Assembly (NCBI GenBank): GCA_963924565.1
Contig: OZ004609.1
Coordinates: 24,676,001-24,740,000 of the forward strand
From: Ascidiella aspersa
Lineage: Eukaryota
DNA: 64,000 bases
Direction of reading: 5' to 3'
This document shows, in pieces, positions 8,948-31,900 of the stretch. The notes beneath the pieces were generated by a model. That model was not told where the DNA came from and did no database searches. It saw only the letters and a program-made list of their open reading frames with translations. Numbering within the stretch: the first letter of the stretch is position 1; every line of letters starts with the position of its first letter. Position numbers and translations under genes: made by a program.

Positions 8948-11900
8948 TCATCTCATTGCCGAGCGGGAGGGAAGCTTTGCCTCTTCATCCGGCTTCGGGT
9001 TATTACGACGCCGTCTCACCGGTCTCCTGTAAGCGTTCCAGATGCGGATCGTCTTGTCCCAGGACCCGGACACGTACTGCGGTTTAGCAAAAAAGTTAGT
9101 TTAAGAAGGACGAGCCGGGAAAATGAAAAAAAATGACATTGCGCTTGATTTCGTGGAACGTATTATTATTTTTTTTTTTGGTCGGCACAAAATTTAGCTA
9201 CAGATGGAACTTCCTTAATTACAACAACATATATTAATTAACAACATATATATTCGAATTAAGGAACTGACGATGCCAGTATAGAAGAAAAATATATATT
9301 CCTTTAACAAAATGTCTGATCCTGGTTTTACTCCGGATTTTAACTTTGCGTTTTATTTGTTGAACGTATATTAAGTTACAACATACTTAGTTGTCTAAAA
9401 ACAAAAACAACTGTTTTACGTGAGAATTTCACTCTATGTTTTCCGTTTAGTGCAGGGGTCGATAAACTTTGTTGCACTGTTGAACAGTTTAAAACAGAAA
9501 TTTATCGCGGACCGAGAACCGTGTGAAAACTTGAATTTGTTGCAACAAAATTCAAACTGCAACAAGTTGAGTTCTAATATAGTGCGTAATAACACAACAA
9601 AGTTACGTATTTTAAAAACCTAGTATAATAGCATTATGAAAAAGAACAAACGACATGCCGACACGTAAAAAAGTATAAACCTACGGACCGGTACGAACTT
9701 CTCGCGGTGTCGACCAGAGGTATAGTAGATCGATGCAAGTTTTGTTATTTAGTGGTATTGGCCATTTTCTATTGTAGAATTACAAATCAACATACGCTTA
9801 AACAAATTCCAAACCTCTAAAATACTGGATGAGACGACAAACTGTACAAATTGATTTCAGGCTTTATTAACACCGCAAAGGCGCCGTTAAAATCGGATCC
9901 TGTTTGTCCTTTAATATAACATGATTTAATAGTCTTTGTTTCGCGACTCGCGCAACTGTTTTTTTTTTTTTGATTTGGTCCAACGGAATTAATTAAGAAA
10001 TAAATTCCACAGTGGCACACAAACTAAATTAACCATAATGGGTTGTTTTAAAAGCTAAAAGCAAATTTACTTGTGATTAATCACAACACACTCACCTGCG
10101 ACCTCTCCACCATGTGGACGATGCTACGGATGTTCTCAGTGTGACCGATGTTGGTTTGCACCAAATTACAGCTCTCCATGTCGTACACCCTTAAGAATGA
10201 GAAAAATAATTAAATAACCAAAATTATATAGTGATGTTGAGCTGGTTAAACAATTTAATTCCTAAAAAGGGTTAAAAAGTCACCATACGTTGAGTCGCGC
10301 TTGCCAACAAAAAAGGCACATATAAGTAGATAGCGGATTGAGCAACTTTAGATATAATAAATCTGTTTTGTGTCTAAAAACCGACAGTCGATTGTCAGTT
10401 TGTAACGGTCTGATCTCAATCTGAAAAAGTTTCGGTAAATGAGATTAACCAGTCGTCAAGCAAACGTGTTATGCACTCTGTTATGGTATTTACATCAAGT
10501 TTATCATTTTTACAAACCGGACAACTGCTGTTTAAAAAAACGTTAAAGCGCCAGAAAGACAATCTTTCGGGTATTTCGCAAGAAACTTACTTGATGACGT
10601 TTTCAACGGCGGCGACTACGCACCCGTTGACCTTATCGATGCAGAGCGCACTGACCGGACCTTGAGTGGACAACACGTGGACACAAGTCATGCCGTCCTC
10701 ACTCTGCAAATTAATACGTTTATATTTATCGAAATAAAAAGGCTGATTTTGTCATATTGATGTTTCTAACAGAAGACTTTTTTATGTGTGTGTGACGACT
10801 GACGAGTGTGTTTGTGTGCGTGAAGCTCGGAGATCACTATACCCTACTTGGTGCCAATTATAAGCTGGGTATGGGCTGAAATCAGAAGATTTCTGCATTT
10901 GTTCAACTTAATTTTATTTCACTCAAAGCATTCATTTTAACTTGTCTGTATTTTTCACAGCTTGCAAGAAAGGCTACTCAAATAGCAATATAGTTGGGCT
11001 TAAAACTACAGTGTTCACTGAATAATATTGACGGTTCCAATATAATAATTTACGATATCCTGAGGACACAATATTCCTAAATAGAAATAGTGTCCACGTG
11101 CATTGGTAAAAGCATCAAACGTTAAACAAACATGCAGTAGAATTGCATTGGCGCGTCAAACCTTACCCAAACCAAAGAAAAAATTATTAAAGTCTATAAG
11201 GGCGTTGGTAAAAGCATCAAACGTTAAGCAGACAAGCATTAGAATTGCATTGGCCCATCAAACCATACCCAAACCTAAAAAAATATTAAAGTGTAAGTGC
11301 ATAAGTAAAAGGCTTCAAACGTTTAAAAAAACAAGCACTAAAATTGCATTGGCCCATCAAATCTCACCCAAATCCTTATGGTTCCGTCTTCCGACCCGGT
11401 GACCCAGTTGTCGTACACGTGGTTCCACCTGACTGCCGTGATCTCGAGCTCGTGGCCCTGGAGCGTGTTGCGCATGCGCATTTCGCTCCCCACCGGACTG
11501 AACTCCCGGATGTAAACCATGCCGTCGCTGCTCGAGTAGGCAAACTCGTTCCTGAGTGAAGTCACATTTACTTTGTTAAAATGTGTGTAAAGTAAAGTTA
11601 AAAAAGGGATAATTTTTCTTGTTTTTTTTATGAACTTAATCGTACTTTAAAAACCCTTTTCACATAGTTCTTTAAAACTCATATAACATTTATTGAGGTA
11701 ACTGAACAAACCTTTATTAATTTACCTTGGAAATAAAAAAATGTTAATTTACCTTCAAATACAAGAAAGCGTTACTCATAAAGTTATAACATTACGTTTT
11801 TTTCCGATTTTATGTAAAAAATCACAAAAATATACGATTTCTCAAAGTCTAATATTCTTTTTAGAACAGATAACAAATGTGTTTTTAAACATTGGAAATA

Positions 11901-13913
11901 ATTGACGACCTAGAACACTACTTCTTTTTATGGTTTCGCAAAACGTTAACATCCGACACAGATACCAAGTCACTTCTCAAATAACGATTAGGGCCTATAT
12001 TTCCGAAATCCATTTATATCTTTCACGTCAATAAATCACCATGTGTAATCAGATTTTAAAACACAAGCGTCACCTCTTCGGGCAATACTCCATGTCGATG
12101 ATGACGCCGTCGCACGCCAGCTCTTCCACAGAGTCCTCGACGTCATCGCCGTACAGATCGCTTGCCTCTAGCGCCGTATTGCGGAAGCGGTCGTGCAGTT
12201 CACCGGTCTCAAGGCACCAGATCAGAATGCGACGGTCCCACCCGCTCGTTATCTGTTCGCGCAGCAAATCCTTCCGTTTTTAACACCAGTTTTTTTGAAC
12301 ACTAAAATTATTACTAATATTTACACTGACATTAACACTAGCACCATAACCATAAAGGTGAAAATGTTTGGCCCAGCGGTTCCCAAACTTTTTTAAAAAT
12401 TTTGCCTGGTGGACCCTTTACGAATATTTTAATATTTCGCGGCCTTATAAAAATTCAAGGGTCAGTTGACCCATGTTTCTTGTAGTACACTAGTGCATTC
12501 ACGATTTTTCCTAATCTAACAACTTTCTAACTAATGCGAACGATTCGCTAATAGCAGGTAGTACAGCATAATAAATGCTTTATGATGTCGCAAACGACAT
12601 CATAAAACACGCTATATGATCGAATAACAAAGCATAACTAAAGACAATAATAACGACAGATAACGTTTAAAACATAGACTAATGTTTAAAAACTTTCGCT
12701 AAAGCCCTATAATGAAAAAGTAAAGACTAATTTCCATTGCGGACCGCGGGAACTGCTGTACGGACCCCAGCTGGTCCGCGGACCCCCGTTTGGGAACCGC
12801 TGGTTTGGCCCTACGTCCAAGTAGCGGCACCGTCTCCTTATTGGAGAACGGACTGGGTCTGAACAATTACTGACATATCAGGCATTCCCGGCCTCCTTTT
12901 CGGCCAGTAGGAAGAAAAATCCACAACACGTTCGCCACTTAGTTTAAATTACTTTCTTTACTTTATTTTAGTTAGTAAAATAATGGCGTTTGGCTTTAAG
13001 CGTAAAGTGAAAACGGAAGTTTTAAACGTTCAACTTGAACCAGTGGCGCACACTTTTAATAACAAAGCTTAAATCGTAGTTTCGTTGTCAGTTTCTGCCA
13101 AGTCAAGGCCGGCAAGTTTATCTCATTTTCGTGACTTTAAAGTCGAACAAATGAAGCCATGTTTGTGCCAATTTGGACAACAGAAAGGCAACAAATGTGG
13201 ACAGTAAGGAAAATACTTTGGTTTGGATTTGCAACAAAAAAAGCTCGATTTTTGCACTAATACAAAAACAATCGATAGCGACCTTTTTTTGGGCACCCAT
13301 AAAAACGAAAGGAACTACAAACCAGGTAAGTGGAGCTGTATAGTTCCTCGTTGTGAACAAGAGCAATCGCTGTGACGCAACTCGCGTGTCCAATCAAAAC
13401 GTTTTTGCAGATGAAGCCCGCCACCCTGTTCGACACCGAGTCACGGGTCATCGCGTCCGCTGGAGGCGTAATGGGTGTCTGGAGGAAACATACAAAAAAA
13501 TTAAAAAATTGGCACTTTGTAGCAAATTGTATTTTAATACTAACCAGTTTTTACAAACCGTCCAAAACCTGTTTGGAAATGCGCAAATAAAATATATTGG
13601 GAAATTAACAACTATATCCTTGCAAACGATGTTATTGGTAAAAATACTATAAGGCCAGTGCAAAAATAGCAGTTAACAAATTTTCTAGTTTTGAATATTT
13701 CGAGATATTGATGGTATTATATTTAAGGTATTTAGGTACAACCAAAACGTCGCTTCACGTTTGGGTGTTAAAACTGATACCTTTGTAAAGGCTTATTTTA
13801 TGGAAAACACCAATTAAACCAAGCAGAACTTGCCATTGACTTCATGGCATTGCAAATGTTTTACTTTTAGGCCAATTGCTTCACACACACATACACACAC
13901 ACAAAACACACAA

Positions 13914-13946
<33 letters not shown>

Positions 13947-16900
13947 CACACACACACATAACACACGTACACGCACATTGCATATTAACGCTTACGTTTC
14001 GTTGTTGGTCCTCTCCTGGTGTCGATACGTCTCGATGATGATCATCTATGTTAAGCTTGTTGTTGGCCTCGTCGCTCAGGATTGTTTCGCCGTTGCCCAG
14101 ATCCGTTCCGGGGTTGTTGGGCACCCGGCTTTGGTCAAGCAGTACGTTGAACTTGCTGCAAACAACGTTGGAAATTTTACTCTACTGAAACTTTATAACA
14201 GCTGAATCAAACATAACTATTTGATTTGCGATTATGGTAAATCTGAAGAAATGCAACGACTTACCGCCCGAGGTGTTTCAACCCAATTTATCGCGTAATA
14301 AACGTTAGAAAGTATTAAATCAATTTATCTGCACGACAGGCCCTGATGTTTTTGCTAAACTTCACTTTAGATGTTCATGCCAAATCGCAATATTTATACT
14401 CAATAACAAATTGGTTTGGGCAAAGTATCTACTAACCGTGGTTATACTAGTTTATCGTTAGCTGGTAAGCTATTACGCTTTTGACTATTTAAGACAGTGG
14501 TTCTCAACCGGGGTGCAGCGGTACTCTGGGGTGCCATTTCTTATGCCTCAGGGTGCCGAGAGATATTTGAAAATATTCAAGAATCTGAATTTTGCGTAAC
14601 TCTTACCATTTTTTGTGTAAGATTAGTGTGCAATAAATCCAATTAAAACTTCCGACGTTGTACAGAGTTGATGTGTGTTGTTCCAGTTTTGTTTTCTTGT
14701 GACATTCTAGTCTAGTGATTTACCTACGGAAAATTTTTGTAGGGGGGCCGCAACCTATTTATTATTTCTTAGGGGTGCCGCAAGCCATAAAAGGTTAAGA
14801 ACCACTGATTTAAGAGGATACGAAAAACAATTTTTCATATTGGTAATAGGAATGTCTGATAATATCGGTTCAGAGCCATTCCCCCTTGCCAAGTGGTAGT
14901 ATCGGTACTCGTCCGACACTAAGGTGGTATCGGTGCCGATCCGATATCAAATTAACATCACCAGGATTTAAAACATGATATTTAAACGATATAATTTCAT
15001 ATTTTTGTTTGTTTTGAGCATATTAATGAGGTATTGGATTAAGGTGTCAGTATCAGACATGTCTAATTGGTACTATAACGATCCTCGATGACAATACTAT
15101 TGTGGCAGCCACCTTAGATTGCAAACGTCAATTGACCATTACTTTAATGACGCGTATGTTCAGATAAAGCTTTAAAACAGTACGTGAAAAAGTCTCTTGC
15201 TTTTTTCATTTGTTTCTGAACTCTGTCTTTGTGGTTTGTTTGTGGTGTTTGTGGTTGGTCTATCTTGTTTTGTGGTTTGTTCCTGATGTATTTTTACTTT
15301 TTACGGCACCCTTGGGGTTCGTGGCCCCAGGTTTGGAACCACTGCACCAAGTGGAATGACTTAGGGGTCAACGTCCACCCTGACCCTAACAAGAAAGTCT
15401 ATATTGCTACCATTTTAAGTCAATGTCATCATTTACTTGTAAGGGAGAGAATATATCTTTATATTTTACAAATTCAGTTTGCCAAACCCGGTAAGTGTTC
15501 AAATAGGTAAAGCAACGGAGACAAACTCACTCTCCGGCCTCGGCGTCATCGTCCTTGTCCGGCGTTAACCGCGTGAGGGCGCTCACGGCCGCGTAGTCGA
15601 AGCCCCACAAGTAGATGTTTCCATCCTCCGACGCCAGCACCAGAAGGTCCAGGTGCTCCACGTAGATGCAGCGCAGCAGAGAGACGTTGGTGCTGGAAAA
15701 TAAAAAGGAGGAAGATGGTTTAGAGATGGTTGGTTTGAGCAGGAGGAGGTTGACATTGCGGCGTACTAAAGTTTATTCGGCTGTAGGTTTGGCACTATAG
15801 TGTTGGTTTGACATGCGTGAAAGGTGTTTTTATTTTTAAAGAGCACGTGACGCGGGTTTCTAATTCAATTTAAAAGATGAACTCTTTACAAACTACGACT
15901 CAGTAATCAGTTTATATTCGTTACGCGGTTTGACGGCCATTTCTGAAGATTCTTTTTTGTTTTATTCATGTTTTTTACCTTGTTTTAACAGCCAAACAAA
16001 CAACAATCTAAGTATTACTATGTCCCAGACTTTGTGTATGAAAAACATTTATGCGGTTTGTTTTCTTGGGATATACAATTTAGCCTTGTCACAATTTGCT
16101 CTTATCTTTCTAGTCCTAACTCAAATTTAATAATTTCATGAGCTTGAGAAAATTCGTTATACGAACTTTTTATGTTCTGCCTTGAAGCAGTACTCTTTCG
16201 TCAGTTTCAAACTATCTGGTATAAGCGTATGTGTTTCATGATTACATGAAACCCACGTGGTTACCGTGATACACGTGACGGCGAAGCAAATCATTAGAAG
16301 TGGGATTGCTTAGAAATGGTATTCGATTCGTATTTGGTAATTATTCTCCATACGCAAAGCGTGTGCATTGACTTTTAAACACATGTATTATTTTCACGGT
16401 TTAGATTATGGCGTTTCGACCACGTTATTGGTTTACAAATAGGTTGAATCCAAGTTTTACCACTAACACGCAACCCAATATGGCTTAAGCCCACTGCAAA
16501 GTAAGGTGCCTTCGCGGCTGTTATAAAGATCGCCCGAAACCGTTTTTTCGGCCAAACAACAAAACGATCGGCTCATTTTCCAAAGGGCTTAGCATTCCGG
16601 TTTAAAACGACTTCAGTGGACAGCCACTAAGGCTGACCATAAGAACGAATGTACACAAGGGCATCGGTCACAATGTGCGGGGGCGTGACTCATGCAACAC
16701 ATTCACACATAAGCGTCGCCGCGTTCGAACGAGGTGAGTCATCGGCGATTTTCTCGCGAGGACAGCGACCCGAAGTTGTGAGGTCGCCGCTTATTTGCGT
16801 TCGAGGTTTGCTGGACGCGTAAACAGGTCGGACGCTGCCCACATATACTTGACACAATATCGGGGCCTTTCATTGCGCTTTCGTGGCGCAATGGATTAGG

Positions 16901-19900: not shown

Positions 19901-22900
19901 TCCGCTGCAACGACAAGGCAGAAACAACAACCACAACAACAAAAAACACAGCATCTGTCGAGTCGAATTTTGGCGCCACAAGCAAAGCCGACCAATCACG
20001 GCGCGCCAAGAGGGTTGACCTACTTTCTAACTTTCGCAGTTCCTTCGATCGCAAGAGGCGAGTTTTGTGTGCTGGGACTGTAAGATCGCAATACATACCC
20101 GGGCCTTATGTTGCCCACGCGGCGCATTGTGTTCGGTGTAGTGTAAATCTGTCAAACACTTTACCGTTTGCAAACTCGTGTTAAATGGAGATTTCTCTTT
20201 CATGCAATCCATGTTTTATTATCTAATTGTGTTAAAATTTCACAATGCTTCAACAATACGGCAAATTATTACGCCGGTATTTTACTAGGACGAAAATAAG
20301 CGCTGCGGGGAGTTTAGAGCAGAATACATAAAATATTGGAACAAATACACATTAAAACTGTTTTTTTCGGGAGCCGTTTAAACGCATTACCGTGTTAGTT
20401 ATCTACTAAGTTTGAACAACAAAATACTGGCACATTTGACACTGATGGAATTGAAAAAAACGACATACTAAGTGACATGCTACATTTAAACCAAACAGCG
20501 CATTTCCACAGTATGCCGAGCTAAGGCGACGAAATTGAGGCCACCAAAAGGACCCGTCAAACCATGTCGATCGGCGTCCACCCGAATTTTGTGTATCCCA
20601 TTCATAAATCAAGCGTCAACCGAGGCGAGCCGGCCCGCGTCACTTCGCTTCCGTCGACCAGCAGCTCGCAGTGCGACATAGCTACGAACAAAGGCCCGGG
20701 CTCGGGCTCCAAAACCGGATCCCGGCCTCTAACCAAAACACAGCGGCGCTTTGGTGCTGTTTGCGTGCATATGCGCGACATGCATAATGCGCTCAGCGGC
20801 GACCTGTGAATCACGAGCAAGCAAAACAGACCCGAGCGATTTGGGCGCGATGCATGCGGGCAGAGTTCCGGCTCAGAAACGCGCCACGGGCTGCATCGGC
20901 TTAGGCGTTGCTTTGGCAAACGAGATTAAGCCATTTTTCTTGGAGGGCAAGGACGGTCGATGTAAGATTGTTTATCATGGGGCGATTGGAAACCACGCTT
21001 AGGGAGGGGCGTGCCTTTGAAGACGTATAAGGATACTGATAAACCCTTGGGAGTACTAAAATAGTTCGGTTTTACCTCTGGAGTACAAACGGCGGGAGAA
21101 TGCGAATGCGTGTGTATTCTGAAATGCTTTCAACGGGTCGCATTCGTTCTGCGAAACAGTCTTTGCAAGGAAAAATACCAATAAATCGCGCTGCGGTGGT
21201 GTGCATAAGCAATATTGCACTACCTTGGGATTTTGGTGCCAAAAGCGGGTGAATAAAGTGAGTAGCGTTTACAGGTTGGGCTGATAACATAAACCAGCTC
21301 TACAAAGAGGGCTCTTCAAAAATACACAACAAACAAAAATTGAATTAATTTGAGTTAAACCAAGTCCAATAAATACAGTTCGCTTCGGTTGCATAATATT
21401 TACCAAATCCATAAATCTTGTTAAGAGGTCGTCAATGACGGCGGTCGCATTCAAACAAATATTAAGTTAAACCGCGTCCAATTGTTTAGCGCAAATCGAC
21501 TCTTGACCCGGGGGCTGCCGTCTTGCAAAGTTTGGCAAGCGGGTGCAAACGGGCACAAAGGCGGTGGGGGGAGATAATCGCGTCCACAGTCAAGGTGCCA
21601 ATCCGGCCGCCTTCTTTCCTGACGCGCCGGGCTCGAGCCGCCAATCGCGCGCGCAAACAAACAAAGCTTGCAAGGGGCCGGCCTGGCAAGCAGGCGCGGC
21701 GATTTTCGAGGAAGCGCGCCACCGGCGATAAGCGATTGGTCTGGAGGGGCGCGAGACAATGCATTTGGGCGCTCGGGGGGCGCTTTATAACCGCTGACCG
21801 CGTCCAAGGTGACATGTCAGTTCGCTCACTGCGTCTTCACAGCAGCATCAGCAGCTTAAGGTTCGGTTTCGGTCCTATGATGCACTAGTTTGGTAAAAGT
21901 GGGAATGCAAAGCGTTGCGTGTATAGTAAACGAATCAGCTCTAAGGTCTTTAACTTGTTCCAGCTAATAGATGGCGGTAAAAATGTAACTCGAGTTCGCA
22001 TTAGTCTCTCCAGCAGCATTTATCTCTGGTTTTCATAAAGTTCCAGATAAACAACGTTTTACAAGAGTTTATAAAGCAAAAAAGTTATAACGTACAGTTA
22101 GTATCAGCCTACAGTTAGCTGTTGATTTAAATGACAATCTTTTCAGTTGGGTCCCAACAAGGAACTTACGATTGAACAGGCTCGCCACCCTCAGCAGCGG
22201 GAAGCCTGTCAAGCGCAAGTCCCACGTGGGGGCGCCATACGCACGACGCTCGCGAGTTTCGAAAGGTCTTCAGAAAAAGCACAGCCCGAGGCGCCCATCG
22301 ATGACGTGTTGTCCCGGAAGGCTTTCTCGGGAGCGATTAGCCCGTCGCCCGGAAAAGGGGACGCCTTGCGGCGTGTGACGTCACGGCGCCGACACGTCAC
22401 AATGCGGCGTGCGCTTTTTTTTCGTTTGCGCGGAGGAAGCGCGACGGCGATTGTTCTTGGGCGCCGGGTTCGACGAAGACAACAGGATGTGAGTATATAA
22501 GCGCGCGCGTGAATCGGCGCTTTTCTCAGGCGCCCCGTTCAGCGGCATAAGCCATCAGCTGTGGATTGCCAGTCGCTTAGTCAGTTGGCGTGGACTTTGC
22601 GCGCCGCTATGAATTAATACGGTGCCACTGGTTTCACAGAGCGAGTGCTGCCTGTCCGCGCTTCTACGCATTGTTGCAGGTCGTCTTTCTCCCAGCAGCG
22701 TTTAGGGCGGCGAGCGCAGAAGTCGACCCAATTTGCGTGACTAGCGGCGAGGGGAGCGCAGCTTTTGTTTAAAGTCGCGAATTGAGGTCGATTTCGAGCG
22801 AGCCCGGCGGATTAGCGCCGACCGTTTAATTGCGACTTCGAGGTCAGCGATTGACGAAAGTCGGTCACAGTTTGGTGTACCAAGAAACAGTAGCACTTGT

Positions 22901-25900
22901 AGTACAGTTAACAACAGCCCGCTATTTCTAGCGACAGGTCGCATGAAACTTCTGCGGAACAGGCCGGCGCCTTTCCAATGGACTAAGCCGACCTGTTTTC
23001 AGAGTTTTATACGAACCGATCGCCTGCGCAACTACAGCAGATGGACGTAACTAGAGGGCAGCGAGCATTTCCTGATATAAGGGAAACACAGCGTCCGAGC
23101 ACAAGGAACTTTCCCAAGGAACAGGCTCGAAACGCGGTCGTTTAGCGCAAAGTCGCAGCCTGTCATTGGGATTTCCCGACTGCTTGGTTCCGCATGAGCG
23201 ACGCTAGGCGACAACCCTAGGGCAATCGCGAAGAGGTGAAATGGGAGCGAGGCTTGTTTACGTTGCGACAGGGCCTGGCGATTGGTGAGCCGACCACTGG
23301 TAAGCAGCCATTCAGCAACAAGTGCTGTACAGTAGGCAGAAAGGCAGTAGCAGCGTTTTTCAACGACAGCGGCCAACGGCATGAACTTTCCCAGGAATAA
23401 GTCTGTCGGAAGACTTGTCCAGAGAAGGTTCCTCCCGAACCGCCGACAGAGCTTGCGTCAAGTTCAGAAGTTTACCGGAAGATTAGATTCAATGTCAGGC
23501 AAAACACTGTAGCCGCAAAACAGTTGTTCATGCATTGGAACATTTTTGGAACGGGCTGTTTGTCAGCGAAAACCAGTCCTTCCTAAAGTGTCCCGTTTTA
23601 TGACCAAACACGCGCATCGAGTTACAAAAAAGATTTCGCAAACCTACGGCCCATCCTCGTTAGTTAGTTTGACATGCAAGCGGCTTCGGGCGGGCTGAAC
23701 TTTACCACGAAATGGTCTGTCGCATTTGTACACCGACCATAACGTGGAGTTCTGACCGCTTTCGACGGCACAAACAACCAGCAGTTTTAGGACAGGAAAA
23801 ACAACCTTGTCCGGTTTTGACGGCGTTGAACTTTCTAAGGAATAGGTTTCAGCCTAATGGAAACCTGTACTTGGCAAGTCAATACTGTCCCGGGGCGCGA
23901 ACGGCTACACATGCATTGGGATGTTCTGTTGAGGGTAGTACTGAGCAGTCCAAAGTACGACCGCGAGTTTGACTTGAAACTTCATCGGAACAGGCCGGGG
24001 TTACTTCATAAGCCCCGCGCTGTTTCTGAAGTTTGACGTCACGGCGGCCATTTTCGGCGATGGAACGTCGCATGTAGCACGCTTTCGACGGTGCAGGAAC
24101 TTCCCTAGGAACAGGCTGTTCACTTGTTTCGAGCCTGTACTATGGAGCTCCCCCGCTGAGAGAGCATTTTCGTCGCAAAATTAATAGAAAATCGCGTTGG
24201 GTATAACTTTTGGAGGCGTTGCAATTTTGGAACATTCATTGGAACGGGCTGGCTCGACCAGGTGTTATGTGTAACACCACAATAAGCTCACCAGCCGTTC
24301 TGGAAGGTTCCCAGACCGCAGTGACCACTGTCTTCACACGCTGACTATATATCCAAAACTAGTGAAGTAGTAATACCCATTTCAAGCCGTTTTCATTTCA
24401 AGTATCCTTGTTTTGACTGGTTGCCATTGAAGCTGCTCGCAGACAGTACAGTCACAGTCGTTTTGTTTGTTTTTTAACAACTAAATCATGGGTTCGCTAT
24501 TGACGTTGTTCAAAAATATAAGCGTTAACGTTTTGAAATAAACATTTTGGCGAGTATTAGCAATGACACGCAGATAAAAACGATAATAATTTATACAAGG
24601 CCAATCGATTCAATGTAGCTTCCACACAGACCTTATCCTTACAAGGTGATGTCTTATTGTGGAGAAGTATTTAGTGTCGACCAGCGCCTTGGCTGTTTAA
24701 CAATGTGCTACATGTAAACACAAAACACATCACACGTTATAAAATTTATTTCACAAAAATATTGCGTTCATTGTAGAGGTTTTAACAGTAAATTTAAAGT
24801 TATCGCCTTAAGTTACGAGTTTTATGCTCAGTGTTCAATTATGAAGCGTAATCAGTAAATTTGCGAACTAGTTTGTTGTTAGTGGTTAAAAGAAATTCAT
24901 ATTTTCGCCACGTTTAAATACTGCGTATGCGCTTTGGCAAAATCACTCCGGTATTATGTTAAATTTCCATTTTACCTAACGTTTATCGCCATAGTGTACC
25001 TTTAGGGCCATATATGTTGAAAGCCGTAACCCGACAATAACGTAATATACAATAGTGAGATTGTTTTAATTTGTTTTATCACGCAAATTTCAGGTTTTGC
25101 GCTTTAATTTACACAGCCGTTAAGTTTGACGTACGCCATAAAAACGACCAATTTGCAAACAGACCAACAGCGGGTACCTTTTGTAGAGCGACGAAGCGGC
25201 GACGAGCGAAGTGTTGAAGGCATAACGAGTGGAAGGCGAAGTTCGTCCGCACTGGGGACTCAAGTGCGACGTCTTGCGGCGAGCCAGACCGCGTTCCTTC
25301 AGTATGCTGTCCAACTTGTCCTTGCACTCTTTCCTTGTCAGGGGCTCCATGCTGCAACGCAGTTGTATGTGTGGCGTTTTGTTTTGCCGTTAAACATCAC
25401 GTAATGTTTAAAAACAGAATACATAGGCACCGAATTCTTAAAAATTCCAGGGCGTATTTTTTTACCCAGTGCAAACATGCTTATTGATTACATAAAAATG
25501 TGCGCTCTTAGATAACTATTTTTGAACTGTTGTGCAACCATTGAAACCATTTAGGCTTTTTCGAAAGCATTTACGTATAATTAAAAAATTGGTTTGAGGC
25601 ATGGCCGCCTCGTGCATGTGCTAATTCAGGGCAAGTTTTTAACACTTTTGTTGCTGAACTAACACTGCTACAGGAATTAATTTAGCACACTAACTGCGCG
25701 CATAACCCGTAATATTCCAGATCTGCAAACCCACGTTCGGCGCCTATAATACATATACACGTATTCTACTTTCACCCGTTTGGTCAAGACAAAGTTCTTC
25801 ACAAAATAACAATAAATATCCATTTACGAAAATACTAATTTTTAAACATATTCCCCCATACCACCTACTTGCCTATCCTGGCCTTTACAAATGTCCCTCA

Positions 25901-28900
25901 CTCAAATGCTTCAATTTTCTCGTTTTGAATGAACATAAATATAATTTTCTTGTTTTATACATACAGTGCAGAAATTTTGCAAACTTAAGCAAACCTTCCG
26001 GAAATAATTGGCACAACTTTCAAACATCATTTAGGACGCTATCTTTTCGCGACACCGAAAAAGCACAAATTCTAGTTCAAGTACCTATACATGAAGTGGC
26101 TGGATTGAAGTCGCTCCCACTTGTAAACGGAGCCATTGCTCGCTCCACTGAACAAAAGCATCGGCACCTTACGAGCTGCAATACACAATGTTGGGTTAGA
26201 ACTGAGTAAGCCGAGAATAGAAATATACGTTTTTTTTATGTTTTTTGCTATGTTTCTGCGTTATGATTTTGAATAAATCTTACAAAATGTTGATGTTTAG
26301 CAAAAGGAGGAGAAAGCTAAAAATCGTTCGTTTACAAGTTCTTGCTGTCTGACCCGTTGTAACCACTTGGTAAAACAGCGCAGAAAGGTATACTATTTGA
26401 GCGCAGCGGCCGGCTAAGGGCAGTTTGTAAATCTTATTGCAGGATCGGGTTAAAAAACAAGATATATAGTATTTAAGACTAGCCTGTCTGCTAATGTTTC
26501 GGCCAAAATAAAAATTAAATCTAGAGTCGACCACCAGCTGTCGTATTTGTTAGGTAAACTTAAAACAAATCATGCAGCCCCGAAAATCCCTTGCACCCCA
26601 CTCACTGTAAGAAATGCTTTCGACGTGGTGCTTGCACTTTAGCGCAGTGAGACAACCCGAGCTATTGAACTTCCACACAAGCAGGTGTCTTCGGTTTGTG
26701 GTGCCTAAAACAGGAAGCTTTTAGTAACAAGCCACCACGATAGACCGCGCTCACCAAAAGCAGAATGAGAAACAGACGATTCCCGTCGAAAAAACAAATG
26801 ACGGTAGCTTGACAAAACCTTGCATATGCGAGGCTGGTCTGTTGGGCTCTGAGCTAAGGCACTGGCAGTTCCTCTATGTTAGAACACTACATATTTATAC
26901 TACGAGCGTACAGCAAACCATTGGCTGTTATATAGTGTTTATTTGGCTGTAATTTCAAAAATGTTAAGAGTATTACTAATAAAAAAACCCTGCTAGCTGC
27001 CTAACCAAACAGGCGCCGGCACAATTTGTCATTAACCGTTTTTTTGTTTTTTTTATATATGTATTTTAGCTATGTTTTCATTAGCCTTCAAATTTCGCAT
27101 AGCCTTGTCGGTAATATAGTAAAGTTAATGGAACATAAAAAAAAAACAGTTAACAATGTCTTGTAAAAGACCAACAAATTTCTACAAAAATCGGTTAAAA
27201 TTTATCGTGAAGAGCGATGACTCACCAACGATTTGCCCAGACTCGGGACTGTACCTCAGCTTAAGCAACCTTTGCGTAACTTCGCCGTCTGACTCTGATT
27301 GAAAGGTGGGAAGAAACTCTGTGACCTAGCAGCAAAATGCACAAACAACCAATATTGAAAGCTTGTAATTGCTAACCCGGGAAAATCCGCAACTCCTTTA
27401 ATAATTTAAATTTTATTGTTCCCATGAGTATGGATAATTAGGATGACCGACTCTGGTTAGCCTTCCAGAAGGCTCTGCTATGTTTGCATCAAATATTGAA
27501 AAAAACACTTAACATCGGTTGGTATTACCTTTATCTTAGCACGGACTGGCTGGTTGTACTCTTTAAAGTAGTGGTTCTCGGACTGTGCTACGTGAAGGCT
27601 TTATTTATTCAAAGTAAAACTAAATTGAGCGAAAATGTTTTTTAAACAGTGTTACGCACTACGCAGTGACGGTAAAACGCCATAAGTTATAAAAGCTAGA
27701 GCAGCCACAACGTTTTTAAACGTTTAGCCCAGGGGTTCTTAAACTGGGGTCCATGGATCCCTTGGGGTCTGTGAACTAATCTTCCACTAAGGACAAATTG
27801 AAATGTTGGTAAGGACAAATTGAAAATGTTTGTGCATTTATGAAAGTAATCAATTTTTCAAAGAAGAGAGTTTAATTATAAAAAAAACGTTTCAGCAATG
27901 AATGTATTTAAGATCTAGTTTACTTAAATTATCAGCATATTTCTGAAAGTCTATTTGCATTGTCACACAAATTTGTGAAGTTTATTTGACTGTGTCGACA
28001 ACTTATGAAGCCATTTCAAAAAATTTAGTGCCTGTACCATGGACCACGCGAAGCAAAAAAAATTAGGGGTCGGCAGTGAAAAAGTTTAGGAAGCCCTGTT
28101 TTAGCCGGTTAACTGAAAAAGCGCAAAGGTCTAAGAACGCAAAATAACGATAAAAAAAATTTCTAAAAACGCAAATGTCCAGCACCAAACGATGATCGTC
28201 CTGCAATATACTAACGTTTTCCCCGGCCTTGGGGTCAAAGAGTGTAGCGTACTGGGCCCCAGAAGCGATCCACACCACCTTGGCTCTCGGGATGTAGCAG
28301 AGGCTTGTGATCGTGTTGAGGAATATGGTTTCCAGTTGGTGACGTAACTGGCCGTCCTGCGACCAAATCTTGACCGTGCGGTCAAACGAACCCGTAAGCA
28401 ACCTATGCGACAGACAAACCACAAATCGTTGCTTTACCTCGGGTAGTTCTGGAGGTTAAACCGCCTGTAAATCGAACTATGAGACCTATTGAGGTTGTAT
28501 TTGCTGATTACTGGCCTATAGACTGTTAAGCTAGTATGTGCCCTACAGACTTAAGCACAATTAATGATTTCGAAAAACAAACAAAAGGCGAACAATACAC
28601 ACAGCATACCTTACATATTCGAGTTTCAGAAAAAGCAAATAGCAGTTTTCAAGTTATCAACCATAAATAATATGGTAAAGTTCGGTTAGTTTTATAAATC
28701 ACCAAAAAACAGGCATAGCTTCATTCAATCAAACATTCTTTAACTTTATTTACCTAAAAAATTGAGGGTCCTTTAACTGATACATTTCAAGGTCATATAT
28801 ATTACTATATTCTTTTTAAATTATTTTAAATCTTATTAAATATTAGCCTTATTGTCTTATTAGCATGCTAAGAAGAGCTATTCAATTACCATGTGTTGTT

Positions 28901-31900
28901 GCCTTATTGTCTTATCAGCATGCTAAGAAGAGCTATTCAATTACCATGTGTTGTTTTCATTGTCCTTGACAAGTATCATGCAGGTTATGCCAGCTTCGTG
29001 AGCATTCTTGTTGCAATAAACCAAATCAAGCCCCTTGGTGCCAGGATACAAAGTGGTATCGTAAATGCAGAACTTCCCGTCAAAACTAAAAAAAAATGTT
29101 ACAATGTTAACCAAAAATTTGCAATAAAAATAACTAAGGTAAATATTTATCTACTAATCATAAATCAAAATTCCTTTAGCATGTCAGTTAATTTTTGTGT
29201 AATGACAAGAATATCTAGTTTAGTTTGAAAAAAAAAATATTAGAAAACTGTATTTCCTGTGCATTTTTTAAGATAGGTTTTTACTAATGAATAGTTATTC
29301 ATATATCTTCTTTGCTTTCCTTTGATGGAGTCGAACCAAAACTGAACAGAGTTTTTGATAGAGTTGAACCAAAACTGAAGTTTTAAACGAACCTGAAGCT
29401 GACAATTTAACGAAGTTCACTCCAAAATTGTGCAACAGCTTATTTTTTAAAGATTCAAGTTGTACCATGACCCATTTAACCATTAAGTGCTTATTAAAGA
29501 TAATTTTAATAAGGGTGTGGTTTAATTTTGCATACCTCAGGTAACTAAAATAAAGTGATTTATATATCTTTTCTATTTAATACTTTATGAAAGCTTAGTT
29601 TAAATACAACCTACAATATATACTTAAATTATAATTATTTAAGACAATTATAGTTGCACAGATTCAGGTTATTCAAGTTACTTTTATTAAACTTGAACTT
29701 TATAAACCAGTTTTAAAAAATAATAGTCAAATTGGATCATTTAATTGCCTCGAACCGAAAGCGTAAATAAACAAGGTTCTTACAAAAAAATTTAATCCAA
29801 ACCATACGGGAACCTAAAAAGTTAAACGGTTGGGCTCAATGTTTAAAACACATTTTTATATCTAAATAACCAGTGTTGTAATGACTTAAGTGCACTTAAG
29901 CCACTGTTTTAAAATGACTTGACTTAAGTCTTCTGACCAGAATGACTTGACTTAAGTCTTTTGGACAAATTACTTGACTTGGACTTGAGTCATTCTGCCA
30001 AACATCTTGGGATTAAAATAAGTGTTTTTTATTAAAATGTATCGCAAGAAATGTATTGCACACTAAACAATTTATTGCTGCATAATTCCTTTGTGTAAAT
30101 TTTTAGTTAAATTGTTGCTCATTATCGGACGAGTTTACCGATTTTAATGGTTTAACAGTTTACTTTTATGACAATAACATGACTTGAAATTGACTTGCTC
30201 TCATAATGACTTGACTGGGACTTGACTTGGGCAACCGATGAATTGGACTGGGACTTGACTTGTTATTTTTGCGAAAAACTTGACTTGTACTTGAGTTATT
30301 TTTCAAATGACTTGACTTGGACTTAAGTCATTTCAAAATGACTTGTTTACAAAACTGTAAATAATATTTTTTAACTTCAAAATGCAATTTCTAAAATAAT
30401 AATATTTTTCTGTTTATTAATGTTAAAAGAAAAGTTAATGTTAAAAGTAAATTGCTCTAATTATTGTGAAGCATAAGAGCTGAGTAAGGTTAGAGATTTA
30501 TGAGCTTAGGTATTTAGGTGAATATTTTATATTCTAATGTGTAACAGATAAACAAGCCACTGCAAATTAAGCTAAATAGATTGGATGTTTATTGTACATA
30601 TATAGCATTCCACAAATTCAGTATATACATTAATAAACCAATGTTCAAAGTTACCCTGCAGTGTAGACTCTTGATTCATGGCAAATTATGCAGGGAACAA
30701 TATCCTTGTGGTGCTGGGCAACAAACGGCTTCCTTCTATCAATAAGATTGCCTGATTTGCGTTGTGGGTCAAGAGTGAAAAGTCTAACAGCACCATTTAA
30801 ACCACATATCACTTGCCGCCTTCTTAGGTTTATGCACATTGCGTAAATTGGAAAACCAATCTGTAAAACATGTATATGTTATAGCAAATTAGAGACATTC
30901 TATAAAAGTATGATATGTTAGGATCCTTGAAAATATACCACAGAGAAATCTAACCTTTATCCTGTCCACAACATTCCCTCCACTTCCCCATGCAATAATC
31001 ATGCCATCATTAGCGCAGGAAAGCAGGATTTTCTGTTCAGTCCAGAACTGGAAGTCTGTTAGCCAACCTCCATGTTCACAACTTGTCAACATCAGTTTGC
31101 CTGTATCCTGCTCCCACCATTTCATAACACCGTCTGTAACAGGTAAACAATGGGAAATGAATATTAAAAAGACAGTTGTGTGTTTTAAAACTAAAACTTT
31201 CATTACATTCCTGCCTATTATGATTTTAAACAGCAGTTTATCAAACAATAATTTTATGTTTTGATGGATTGATCAACTGCTTAGTGTTTGATCACGTTAT
31301 ATGTTTAAAAAATGTTCTTATTTTTCAATGCTCTTTACCTAATGATGCCTTGAAATACCATTTTCACTCTGATTGATATATTACGTTCCAAAGTAATGTT
31401 CTAATATTTTATTTATTTTTAATAGCAGACAGATTGCTTGTTCAAAAGATTATTCTGACTCTCATTTCTATTTATAATTTGTGTTGTTTGTTGATGCTTG
31501 TTTTACTTTTTAATATTATACTTTCTATTGGTTGTTTTTGCATTGTGTTTGTTTGTTATTTCCCTGTTACCCAAATGCCTAAATTTGTTTTGGCACAGGT
31601 GACTTGAAGGTCTTTCTAGGCACCTTGCTGGTCTGGCCATTAGAGGTGTATAGTTTAGTTTTACATTTCAAATTTTGTTTATTTGTGATTATCATTGGGC
31701 ATGGCAAACACACTTACTTACTTACTTACAACATTCCTTTATGAAAAAAAAAACATTTTTTCCCGTCTTATGGACAAATAGGACTTTTGGTAGTAATAAT
31801 TTAAGTAGGGTGAAAATCTCTGGAATTTTAAGAAAACTAAAAAATAGCTACGGTAGCGTAGCATTTCTTAAAACAAATAGGATTCTTTATCTCACCTTCA

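What the first reader, a model, noticed from the sequence alone, without database searches (positions are those of the whole stretch)
22944..24250. Seed diversification and block-duplication history within the cluster
Seen: predicted seeds (nt 2-8) form four related classes: GAAACUU (HP1, HP7), GGAACUU (HP2, HP8), UGAACUU (HP3, HP5, HP6) and GGAACAU (HP4, HP9). The order HP1-HP2-HP4 is repeated as HP7-HP8-HP9. Eight of nine arms also keep a GGAA(C/T)(A/G)(A/G)G 3' block. Inference: one ancestral hairpin radiated by single seed substitutions and the block then duplicated, giving overlapping target sets. The conserved 3' block suggests supplementary pairing or a processing determinant.
Basis: partly seen in the sequence, partly recalled or inferred. 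Interest (0 to 1): 0.75.

Follow-up and report, generated by a model that had tools for sequence, protein, structure and literature searches.

The report
Sea-squirt microRNA cluster with diversified seeds
This is a tandem cluster of ten related microRNA hairpins in a sea squirt whose target-recognition "seeds" differ by single letters, and it is a new example of an arrangement already described in the model sea squirt Ciona, not a new kind of thing.

Summary
The nine hairpins, the four heptamers and the 8-of-9 GGAA(C/T)(A/G)(A/G)G block are all present on the + strand.

- A tenth hairpin lies at 22157-22226 (GGAACUU).
- A paralogous 17-hairpin cluster lies on another chromosome (G000:C1:3923518-3925583, minus strand) and carries three of the four classes.

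The hairpins belong to the ascidian mir-4000 / mir-4018 / mir-1502 group:
- HP6's 5' arm is 20 of 20 identical to the published Halocynthia roretzi miR-1502.
- Each of the three Ciona-built Rfam models has its best genome-wide hit in one of the two clusters, all below gathering score.

The seeds form a star: GGAACUU is one change from each other class. The classes still group when seed columns are removed. The order A-B-C recurs, with 15 of 22 forward transitions (permutation P 0.003).

Block duplication is directly visible only in the second cluster. In the window, HP1/7 and HP4/9 pair and HP2/8 does not clearly. With the paralogues added, no pair is exclusive.

No small-RNA data exist, so 5' ends are inferred. 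Hendrix et al. 2010 described the same architecture in Ciona. The scan holds another first-reader note on this same stretch.

The parts
22157..22226 (+). HP0. Class B, presumed 5p AGGAACUUACGAUUGAACAGGCU.
   Evidence: R1 scores it 49.3 bits. Fold -37.7 kcal/mol on +, -49.7 on -. Seed.
22941..23011 (+). HP1. Class A, seed GAAACUU (mir-4000-like).
   Evidence: (45.9 bits).
23101..23179 (+). HP2. Class B, seed GGAACUU.
   Evidence: (45.7 bits).
23378..23435 (+). HP3. Class D, seed UGAACUU.
   Evidence: (40.1 bits).
23533..23597 (+). HP4. Class C, seed GGAACAU (mir-4018-like).
   Evidence: (41.1 bits). It is the best genome-wide hit of Rfam mir-4018, at 27.6 bits.
23692..23756 (+). HP5. Class D, seed UGAACUU. 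The only one of HP1-9 without the exact 3' block.
   Evidence: (40.5 bits).
23823..23884 (+). HP6. Class D. This is miR-1502.
   Evidence: Its 5' arm is 20 of 20 identical to the H. roretzi miR-1502 mature sequence printed in PMC5399378. It is the best genome-wide hit of Rfam mir-1502, at 36 bits.
23972..24038 (+). HP7. Class A, seed GAAACUU.
   Evidence: (43 bits).
24092..24154 (+). HP8. Class B, seed GGAACUU.
   Evidence: (50.7 bits).
24225..24314 (+). HP9. Class C, seed GGAACAU, with a long apical extension.
   Evidence: (42.4 bits).
21786..21790 (+). TATA-like motif upstream of the cluster. A possible promoter of a separate + strand transcript. Inferred only.
   Evidence: Motif positions. 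Further TATAA motifs lie at 22070 and 22086. No RNA reads support any of them.
24537..24542 (+). AATAAA, 223 nt after HP9. A possible polyadenylation signal. Inferred only.
   Evidence: No RNA reads support it.

Best explanation
The stretch is a polycistronic cluster of ten paralogous microRNA hairpins on the + strand. It lies between WD40-repeat exons that are on the - strand. The hairpins belong to the ascidian family group that Ciona annotation splits into three families:
- mir-4000: seed GAAACUU, class A here.
- mir-4018: GGAACAU-like, class C here.
- mir-1502: UGAACUU, class D here.
A fourth class B (GGAACUU) is one substitution from each of the other three.

Inferred mechanism: one long transcript is cut by Drosha and Dicer, and the conserved 5' arms become guide strands that start at the mostly-U base just before the heptamer.

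Evolution: the four seed classes arose by single substitutions before the family split into two genomic clusters. This one has 10 hairpins on C3. The other has 17 hairpins on C1 carrying classes A, B and C. Both arrays then grew by tandem duplication of single hairpins and of A-B-C units.

Shown here: the hairpins, the seed classes in the homologous register, the second cluster, the class lineages, the non-random order, and block copies in the C1 cluster.

Inferred, not shown: processing, 5' ends, transcription, targets, and that the window's two A-B-C runs are one duplication event.
For: Hairpins and strand
- Ten + strand hits to R1 score 40-51 bits, against at most 18 bits on the - strand.
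- 11 of the 13 consensus pairs show compensatory changes.
- Among 27 hairpins, nt 4, 5, 6 and 8 are invariant, nt 2, 3 and 7 are two-state, and nt 1 is U in 19 of 27.
- Positions -3 to -1 and 9 to 12 vary freely. This is a seed-type conservation profile that exists only on the + strand 5' arm.
- 5' arms are 42-82% identical, against 19-61% for 3' arms.

Family assignment
- HP6 is 20 of 20 identical to the H. roretzi miR-1502 mature sequence.
- The genome-wide best hit of each Ciona-built Rfam model falls in one of the two clusters. mir-1502 hits HP6 (36 bits), mir-4018 hits HP4 (27.6 bits) and mir-4000 hits c04 (28.6 bits).
- The Rfam mir-4000 consensus begins uGAAACuU.

Second cluster.

Only two loci in the genome
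- In the pattern scan, 11 of 26 matches fall in the two clusters and the other 15 are singletons, against 17 control matches.
- With model R2, all 13 hits with E below 1 fall in the two clusters.

Classes as lineages. Order. Block copies.

Constraint within the species
- Of the 19 listed differences in a second individual or haplotype across 22100-24350, 2 fall in the hairpins (31% of the bases) and none in a 5' arm. Binomial P is 0.036.

Precedent
- Hendrix et al. 2010 (passages read) describe two Ciona clusters of 25 and 11 microRNAs.
- Their families differ by one seed nucleotide and are shared between the two clusters.
Against: - No small-RNA library was available, so no mature product, 5' end or arm choice is shown.
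- An RNA-seq run of the same species label gave 0 reads over 21300-24575. Only about 6 in 100 of that run was read, and primary microRNA transcripts are short-lived.
- All Rfam matches are below the curated gathering scores: 36 against 66, 27.6 against 66, and 28.6 against 58. The gathering-threshold scan of the window found nothing.
- Four of the ten hairpins fold better on the - strand. HP0 does so by 12 kcal/mol.
- The C1 hairpins were listed with a seed regular expression, so seed invariance there is partly by construction. The independent energy scan found hairpins only at those places.
- Trees rest on 40-63 columns and most forks are weak.
- The polymorphism table left 4 rows unshown.
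Confidence: 0.8

Rival explanations
1. The repeated order in the window is not a block duplication inside this cluster. The A-B-C unit is older than the split into two clusters. HP1-2-4 and HP7-8-9 are then two inherited units, or the result of separate single-hairpin duplications or gene conversion.
For: - With the C1 paralogues included, c06A joins HP1 and HP7 (87/94), and HP1+HP7 is not the best grouping.
- HP2 pairs with HP0 rather than HP8 (66/84).
- There is no spacer similarity in the window. The only internal match is the 24-nt 5' arm of HP1 and HP7.
- HP3 interrupts the first run.
- A-B-C runs also occur in C1.
Against: - None of HP1+HP7, HP2+HP8 or HP4+HP9 is rejected (p-AU 0.29-0.48).
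- Two ABC triplets among the window's seven A/B/C hairpins arise in only 1.5% of shuffles.
Confidence: 0.35
2. At least one class is processed in a different register, so the real seeds differ from the reader's. For example, class D might start at the conserved U of UGAACUU, giving the seed GAACUUU.
For: - nt 1 is U in 8 of 8 class A and 8 of 8 class C hairpins. In class B it is A, A, A, A, U, U, C, C, and in class D it is A, C, U.
- In class D the next base is always U.
- The Rfam mir-1502 consensus (UugACUUU...) aligns to HP6 starting one base later than the H. roretzi mature sequence.
Against: - The conserved block is exactly seven bases and is followed by variable nt 9-12 in all 27 hairpins.
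- The printed H. roretzi miR-1502 starts UUGAACUU. That paper derived it from a match of at most two mismatches to a miRBase mature sequence (methods passage).
Confidence: 0.2
3. The functional transcripts come from the - strand, in sense with the WD40 host intron, or from both strands.
For: - HP0, HP1, HP3 and HP9 fold better on the - strand. HP0 gives -49.7 (z -5.4) against -37.7.
- Rfam mir-1502 scores both strands almost equally (36.0 and 35.7 bits).
- Hendrix et al. report antisense reads at three loci of the Ciona 11-microRNA cluster.
Against: - The invariant heptamer sits at nt 2-8 of a 5' arm only on the + strand.
- R1 gives 40-51 bits on + against at most 18 on -.
- Six of ten hairpins fold better on +.
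Confidence: 0.12
4. The hairpins are not microRNA genes. They would be a hairpin-forming tandem repeat or the remains of a mobile element.
For: - No expression evidence.
- No Rfam match at gathering score.
Against: - Only two loci exist in 308.6 Mb.
- Tandem Repeats Finder finds no array.
- Conservation is seed-shaped, not uniform.
- One member is identical to a published microRNA.
- Relatives in Ciona savignyi were detected by northern blot and in situ hybridisation (PMC5831862, passages read).
Confidence: 0.04

Closest known systems
The two large Ciona intestinalis microRNA clusters of Hendrix et al. 2010 (Genome Biol 11:R39, PMC2884542). One holds about 25 microRNAs in about 4 kb (Ci-mir-2200/2201/2203). 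The other holds 11 (Ci-mir-2200/2201/2204/2217).
   Same: - Two dense tandem clusters.
- One has three families and the other four.
- The families differ by a single seed nucleotide.
- Families are shared between the two clusters.
- The hairpins are symmetric.
Here the counts are 17 hairpins of 3 classes in 2.07 kb and 10 hairpins of 4 classes in 2.16 kb.
   Different: - This is a different ascidian. The Ciona-built Rfam models score only 21-36 bits.
- Hendrix et al. took the clusters to be recent and specific to C. intestinalis.
- Their sequences are in a supplement I could not open, so direct homology is untested.
- That miRBase later renamed those families mir-4000 and upward is my recollection, not a tool result.
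The csa-miR-4018a / 4018b / 4000f cluster of Ciona savignyi (Zhang et al. 2018, PMC5831862).
   Same: mir-4018-type and mir-4000-type hairpins are adjacent in one cluster and thought to share one precursor. Classes C and A are adjacent here.
   Different: - That cluster has only three members.
- Expression was shown there: mesenchyme-like cells of tailbud embryos and larvae, lost at metamorphosis. A Mapk1 reporter assay was also done.
- Nothing of that kind is known for this locus.
The miR-1502 family (Rfam RF03735; Ciona mir-1502a-d; Halocynthia roretzi miR-1502 in PMC5399378).
   Same: HP6's 5' arm equals the printed H. roretzi mature sequence at 20 of 20 positions. HP6 is the best genome-wide Rfam hit.
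   Different: - The score of 36 bits is below the gathering score of 66.
- The Rfam consensus seed region (UugACUUU) differs from UUGAACUU.
- The literature treats miR-1502 as a family of its own, not as one class of a larger cluster family.
The vertebrate miR-17~92 cluster and its paralogues (recalled, for analogy only).
   Same: A polycistron of related hairpins falling into a few seed families, with paralogous clusters elsewhere in the genome.
   Different: No sequence relation. Those paralogues came from whole-genome duplication.

Membership tests
Canonical animal microRNA gene | An imperfect hairpin with roughly 22-nt arms in a stem about three helical turns long. | tested here: met
   All ten fold as single hairpins, -28 to -45 kcal/mol with extended basal stems. 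11 of 13 consensus pairs show compensatory changes.
Canonical animal microRNA gene | Sequenced 5p and 3p products with uniform 5' ends and 2-nt offsets. | not testable with these tools
   No small-RNA run was offered.
Canonical animal microRNA gene | Conservation strongest in the seed of one arm and weakest in the loop and flanks. | tested here: met
   nt 4, 5, 6 and 8 are invariant in 27 of 27. nt -3 to -1 and 9 to 12 are variable. 5' arms are more alike than 3' arms.
Canonical animal microRNA gene | Evidence of transcription. | tested here: inconclusive
   0 reads over 21300-24575 in one RNA-seq run, of which about 6 in 100 was read.
mir-1502 (RF03735) | Score at or above Rfam's gathering score (66 bits). 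| tested here: not met
   HP6 scores 36 bits. It is nevertheless the best hit in the genome.
mir-1502 (RF03735) | Mature sequence matching a published family member. | tested here: met
   20 of 20 with the H. roretzi miR-1502 printed in PMC5399378 (against the sequence).
mir-4018 (RF03660) | Score at or above Rfam's gathering score (66 bits). | tested here: not met
   HP4 scores 27.6 bits and is the best hit in the genome. The consensus seed region gGGuaCAU compares with UGGAACAU here.
mir-4000 (RF03485) | Score at or above Rfam's gathering score (58 bits). | tested here: not met
   The best hit is 28.6 bits at c04 in the C1 cluster. In the window there is one hit, 21 bits at HP4.
mir-4000 (RF03485) | The same seed as the family consensus. 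| tested here: met
   The consensus uGAAACuU equals UGAAACUU in all 8 class A hairpins. This compares with a consensus only.
Ciona-type paired seed-variant clusters (Hendrix 2010) | Two dense clusters whose families differ by one seed nucleotide and are shared between the clusters. | tested here: met
   Classes A, B and C occur in both clusters.
Ciona-type paired seed-variant clusters (Hendrix 2010) | Sequence homology to Ci-mir-2200, 2201, 2203, 2204 and 2217. | not testable with these tools
None appear in the main text.

The most novel reading that the evidence does not exclude
The two-cluster, A-B-C-unit architecture could be ancestral to ascidians. Hendrix et al. instead concluded that it was a recent Ciona intestinalis invention. 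On this reading mir-4000, mir-4018, mir-1502 and an unnamed GGAACUU class would form one old superfamily. Its seeds were fixed early, and the array kept turning over by unit duplication.

A bolder add-on concerns the conserved 3' block. It starts at nt 12-15 and often reads GGAAC, which repeats the seed core. That could let one target motif pair in two registers.
Probability: 0.35. Interest if true: 0.55.

Novelty: new member of a known kind. Interest (0 to 1): 0.38.

Why it matters
**Seed evolution.** The locus is a compact natural experiment in how microRNA seeds diversify. There are four classes one substitution apart and 27 copies in two clusters.

**Annotation.** Standard annotation misses the whole family. 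The Rfam gathering-threshold scan of the window found nothing, because the three relevant models were built from Ciona alone.

**Age of the arrangement.** If orthologous clusters in other ascidians confirm the order, this would revise the published view that such clusters are recent and Ciona-specific.

**Possible function.** In Ciona savignyi, relatives are active in larval mesenchyme before metamorphosis. The locus therefore names candidate developmental regulators in a second ascidian.

Tried and rejected
- **Rfam at gathering threshold.** 0 matches in the window. Only the permissive scan gave leads.
- **Tandem Repeats Finder.** It found no array in either cluster. The copies are too diverged.
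- **Sequencing data for 5' ends.**
  - No small-RNA run was offered.
  - The one RNA-seq run gave no reads on the cluster.
  - The run labelled organism B is about 99% identical in 151-225-nt contigs, so it gives no cross-species comparison.
- **Metagenome scan.**
  - A class A pattern gave 22 single matches, about what chance predicts.
  - R1 found no hairpin cluster in those loci; the best score was 15.2 bits with E 0.16. Rejected as chance.
- **Literature string searches.**
  - The HP6 5' arm found only the H. roretzi paper.
  - The c04 5' arm found nothing.
  - No sequences of mir-4000, mir-4018 or Ci-mir-22xx appear in the main texts read.
- **Supplements.** They are closed. Additional file 5 of PMC2884542 and the additional files of PMC5831862 and PMC5399378 may hold mature sequences that would settle homology and 5' ends.
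- **Within-class trees.** Built to date the window's pairs against the C1 paralogues. Unresolved.
- **Model R2.** Built from all 27 hairpins, it came out without base pairs because the alignment was poor. It was used as a sequence profile only.
- **Other hairpins between HP0 and HP1.**
  - 22375-22475 is not better than shuffles (z -1.3).
  - 22710-22810 is modest (z -2.9).
  - Neither carries the family motif, and neither was counted as a member.
- **Target-site enrichment in 3' UTRs.** Not attempted, because there is no gene annotation for this genome here.
- **Host gene.**
  - WD40-type open frames lie on the - strand at 8951-12279 and 28063-31248. One passes Pfam's cut-off at 41.3 bits.
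  - I did not show that they belong to one gene.
- **Caveat on genome searches.** Only 150 of 20750 and 150 of 29026 first-look candidates were scored.
Full report
**What is in the sequence**

Window 22100-24350 is G+C-richer than its flanks: 52% in 22001-24000 against 34-42% on either side. On the + strand it holds a row of hairpins whose 5' arms share the plan (U)-G(A/G)AAC(U/A)U, then 3-6 variable bases, then (G/U)GAA(C/U/A)(A/G)GG(C/U).

All nine hairpins of the finding fold as single long hairpins, -28 to -45 kcal/mol over 71-112 nt. A tenth, HP0 at 22157-22226, lies 784 nt upstream of HP1 and has the same plan.

A covariance model built from the ten (R1) scores them at 40-51 bits on the + strand. 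Nothing else in the 64-kb window exceeds 18 bits. The alignment's consensus stem has 13 pairs, and 11 of them show compensatory changes. The window has no N.

**Check of the observation**

- GAAACUU: HP1, HP7
- GGAACUU: HP2, HP8, and also HP0
- UGAACUU: HP3, HP5, HP6
- GGAACAU: HP4, HP9

The motif GGAA[CT][AG][AG]G is exact in 8 of 9 of HP1-9. It is absent from HP5 and from HP0. The order is B ... A B D C D D A B C, so the A,B,C run is repeated, with HP3 inserted in the first run.

**What it is**

The scan's own notes call this genome a sea squirt.

- *Rfam, window.* At gathering threshold Rfam finds nothing in the window. The permissive scan of 22400-24800 gave 6 matches:
  - mir-1502 on HP6: 36.0 bits on +, 35.7 on -, gathering score 66.
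  - mir-4018 on HP4: 27.6 bits on +, 21 on -, gathering score 66.
  - mir-4000 on HP4: 21 bits, gathering score 58.
  - A chance-level lncRNA hit.
  - The three microRNA families were all built from Ciona.
- *Published mature sequence.* The Halocynthia roretzi survey (PMC5399378, passages read) prints the mature miR-1502 as UUGAACUUUCUAAGGAAUAG. This equals HP6's 5' arm at 20 of 20 positions.
- *Rfam, whole genome.* Across the 308.6-Mb genome each model's best hit falls in this family:
  - mir-1502 hits HP6.
  - mir-4018 hits HP4.
  - mir-4000 hits a hairpin of a second cluster.
  - All are below gathering score, so by Rfam's rule they are not members. I read them as diverged relatives.

**A second cluster**

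R1 run on the genome found two weaker hits on contig C1. A filter-free search, a folding scan and a seed scan of that place show 17 hairpins. They are 110-140 nt apart, on the minus strand of G000:C1:3923518-3925583. There are none in the 10 kb on either side.

Their classes in order are B A C A B A C B C A B C A B C C A. Class D is absent. Five of them hit Rfam mir-4000 at 16.7-28.6 bits, and its consensus starts uGAAACuU, which is class A.

No third locus was found:
- A pattern for classes A-C gave 26 matches genome-wide against 17 for the reversed control. Eleven are in the two clusters and 15 are singletons.
- A profile of all 27 hairpins (R2) gave 13 hits with E below 1, all in the two clusters. 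It also gave 4 hits elsewhere at E 2.3-4.6.
- Both model searches scored only 150 first-look candidates each, so these are lower bounds.

**Seed register and strand**

Over the 27 hairpins:
- nt 4, 5, 6 and 8 are invariant.
- nt 2 is G 24 times and U 3 times.
- nt 3 is G 19 times and A 8 times.
- nt 7 is U 19 times and A 8 times.
- nt 1 is U in 19 of 27: all 8 of class A and all 8 of class C.
- The three bases before and the four after vary freely.

It exists only on the + strand 5' arm.

Caveats:
- The C1 hairpins were listed with a seed expression, so invariance there is partly by construction. The energy scan found 16 of the 17 independently and found no hairpin without the motif inside the array.
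- nt 1 is not U in most of class B and class D, so a one-base shift in those classes is not excluded.
- Energy does not settle the strand. Six of ten hairpins fold better on + and four on -. HP0 gives -49.7 against -37.7.

**Seed radiation**

GGAACUU is one substitution from each other class, and the others are two apart.

The classes are more than labels. After removing nt 1-8 and the bases that pair with them, a tree of the 27 needs 6 label changes against a shuffled mean of 14.6 (as low in 0 of 200). Class A is then one side of a branch with weak support (49/85), and two of the three class D hairpins sit with class B.

Classes A, B and C each have members in both clusters, so the seed changes predate the split into two clusters.

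**Block duplication**

In C1, blastn gives collinear matches:
- c10A with c13A: 77% over 71 nt.
- c11B with c14B: 72% over 76 nt.
- c12C with c16C: 76% over 70 nt.
- c13A with c17A: 76% over 88 nt.
- c15C with c16C: 21 identical bases.

That is direct evidence for duplication of an A-B-C unit.

Across both clusters the cyclic order A>B>C>A holds in 15 of 22 transitions (P 0.003). For the window alone it is 5 of 6 (P 0.05), or two ABC triplets (P 0.015).

In the window the only internal match is the 24-nt 5' arm of HP1 and HP7.

Trees of the window's hairpins:
- With seed columns: HP1+HP7 at 85/96, HP4+HP9 at 91/94, HP2+HP0 at 66/84. HP2+HP8 is not rejected (p-AU 0.41).
- Without seed columns: HP1+HP7 at 40/56. 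HP2+HP8 is recovered only when HP0 is left out (62/31). HP4 and HP9 are adjacent but not sisters (p-AU 0.43-0.46).
- With C1 paralogues: c06A joins HP1 and HP7 (87/94), and no window pair is exclusive.

A single local block duplication is not shown either. The units may be older than the two clusters.

**The 3' block**

The block starts at nt 12 (7 hairpins), 13 (11), 14 (8) or 15 (1), so it covers the nt 13-16 region used for supplementary pairing. That role is established knowledge, not tested here.

The exact motif holds in 12 of 27 hairpins: 8 of HP1-9 and 4 of 17 in C1. The looser (G/U)GAA..GG is general. Its role was not testable.

**Constraint and expression**

A second individual or haplotype (run X2) differs from the window by 38 letters and 59 gap letters over 21356-24634.
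- Of the 19 listed differences in 22100-24350, two fall in hairpins, which make up 31% of the bases. They are 22224 at the edge of HP0 and 23410 in the loop of HP3. None falls in a 5' arm. Binomial P is 0.036.
- Four rows of that table were not shown.
- RNA-seq run X4 (about 6 in 100 read) has 0 reads over 21300-24575. This is uninformative for a short-lived primary transcript or a stage-restricted gene.

**Surroundings**

- WD40-type open frames lie on the - strand on both sides, at 8951-12279 and 28063-31248. One passes Pfam's cut-off at 41.3 bits. The cluster is therefore probably antisense inside an intron of a WD-repeat gene. I did not show that the exons belong to one gene.
- TATA-like motifs lie at 21786, 22070 and 22086, and an AATAAA at 24537. 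They fit a separate + strand transcript but are unsupported by reads.

**Comparison with what is known**

- Hendrix et al. 2010 (PMC2884542, passages read) describe two clusters in Ciona intestinalis:
  - A second cluster of 11 microRNAs in four families, with families shared between the two clusters.
  - Antisense reads at three loci.
  - They judged the clusters recent and specific to that species.
- Zhang et al. 2018 (PMC5831862, abstract and passages) show a csa-miR-4018a/4018b/4000f cluster in C. savignyi.
  - It is expressed in mesenchyme-like cells of tailbud embryos and larvae and lost at metamorphosis.
  - Mapk1 is a reporter-validated target of miR-4000f.
- That the Ci-mir-22xx families are today's mir-40xx is my recollection. 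The sequences are in closed supplements.

The kind of system is therefore known. What is new here:
- Its presence as two clusters with the same logic in a non-Ciona ascidian.
- The link of mir-1502 to the mir-4000 and mir-4018 types.
- The recurring A-B-C unit.

**Verdict**

This is a new member of a known kind, of moderate interest.

Noticed in passing
G000:C1:3923518-3925583 (L012 7519-9584, minus strand): A paralogous cluster of 17 hairpins about 122 nt apart. Classes in order: B A C A B A C B C A B C A B C C A. There are clear block copies (c10-c12 against c13-c16). The scan's findings index lists no microRNA note for this place.
   Followed up: yes
window 22148-22237: HP0 folds much better on the minus strand (-49.7 kcal/mol, z -5.4) than on the plus strand (-37.7, z -2.7). 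It might be processed from both strands, or from the host intron.
   Followed up: partly
window 22710-22810: A stable + strand hairpin (-42.6 kcal/mol, z -2.9) lies between HP0 and HP1 and lacks the family motif. It may be an unrelated microRNA or chance. A variant in run X2 lies inside it at 22742.
   Followed up: partly
window 23908: Run X2 carries a 26-letter insertion here, between HP6 and HP7. It resembles the adjacent sequence, suggesting a local tandem duplication polymorphism.
   Followed up: no
window 24565-24800: Contig depth jumps to 1171-2646 in the DNA runs, with many partly fitting contigs. This points to a dispersed repeat just downstream of the cluster. The weak Rfam Six3os1_3 hit at 24663-24744 lies within it and is probably chance.
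   Followed up: no
window 22941-24314 (5' arms): The pentamer GGAAC (or GAAC) occurs twice in many 5' arms, once in the seed and once about 12 nt later in the 3' block. The guide strand would therefore carry an internal direct repeat of its seed core.
   Followed up: partly
window 8951-12279 and 28063-31248, minus strand: Open frames with WD40 repeat matches lie on both sides of the cluster (one at 41.3 bits, above Pfam's cut-off). This is probably one multi-exon WD-repeat gene with a roughly 12-kb intron holding the cluster.
   Followed up: partly
window 13817-14205: Open frames here translate to runs of alternating Cys-Val or Thr-His. This indicates a (TG)n/(CA)n microsatellite.
   Followed up: no
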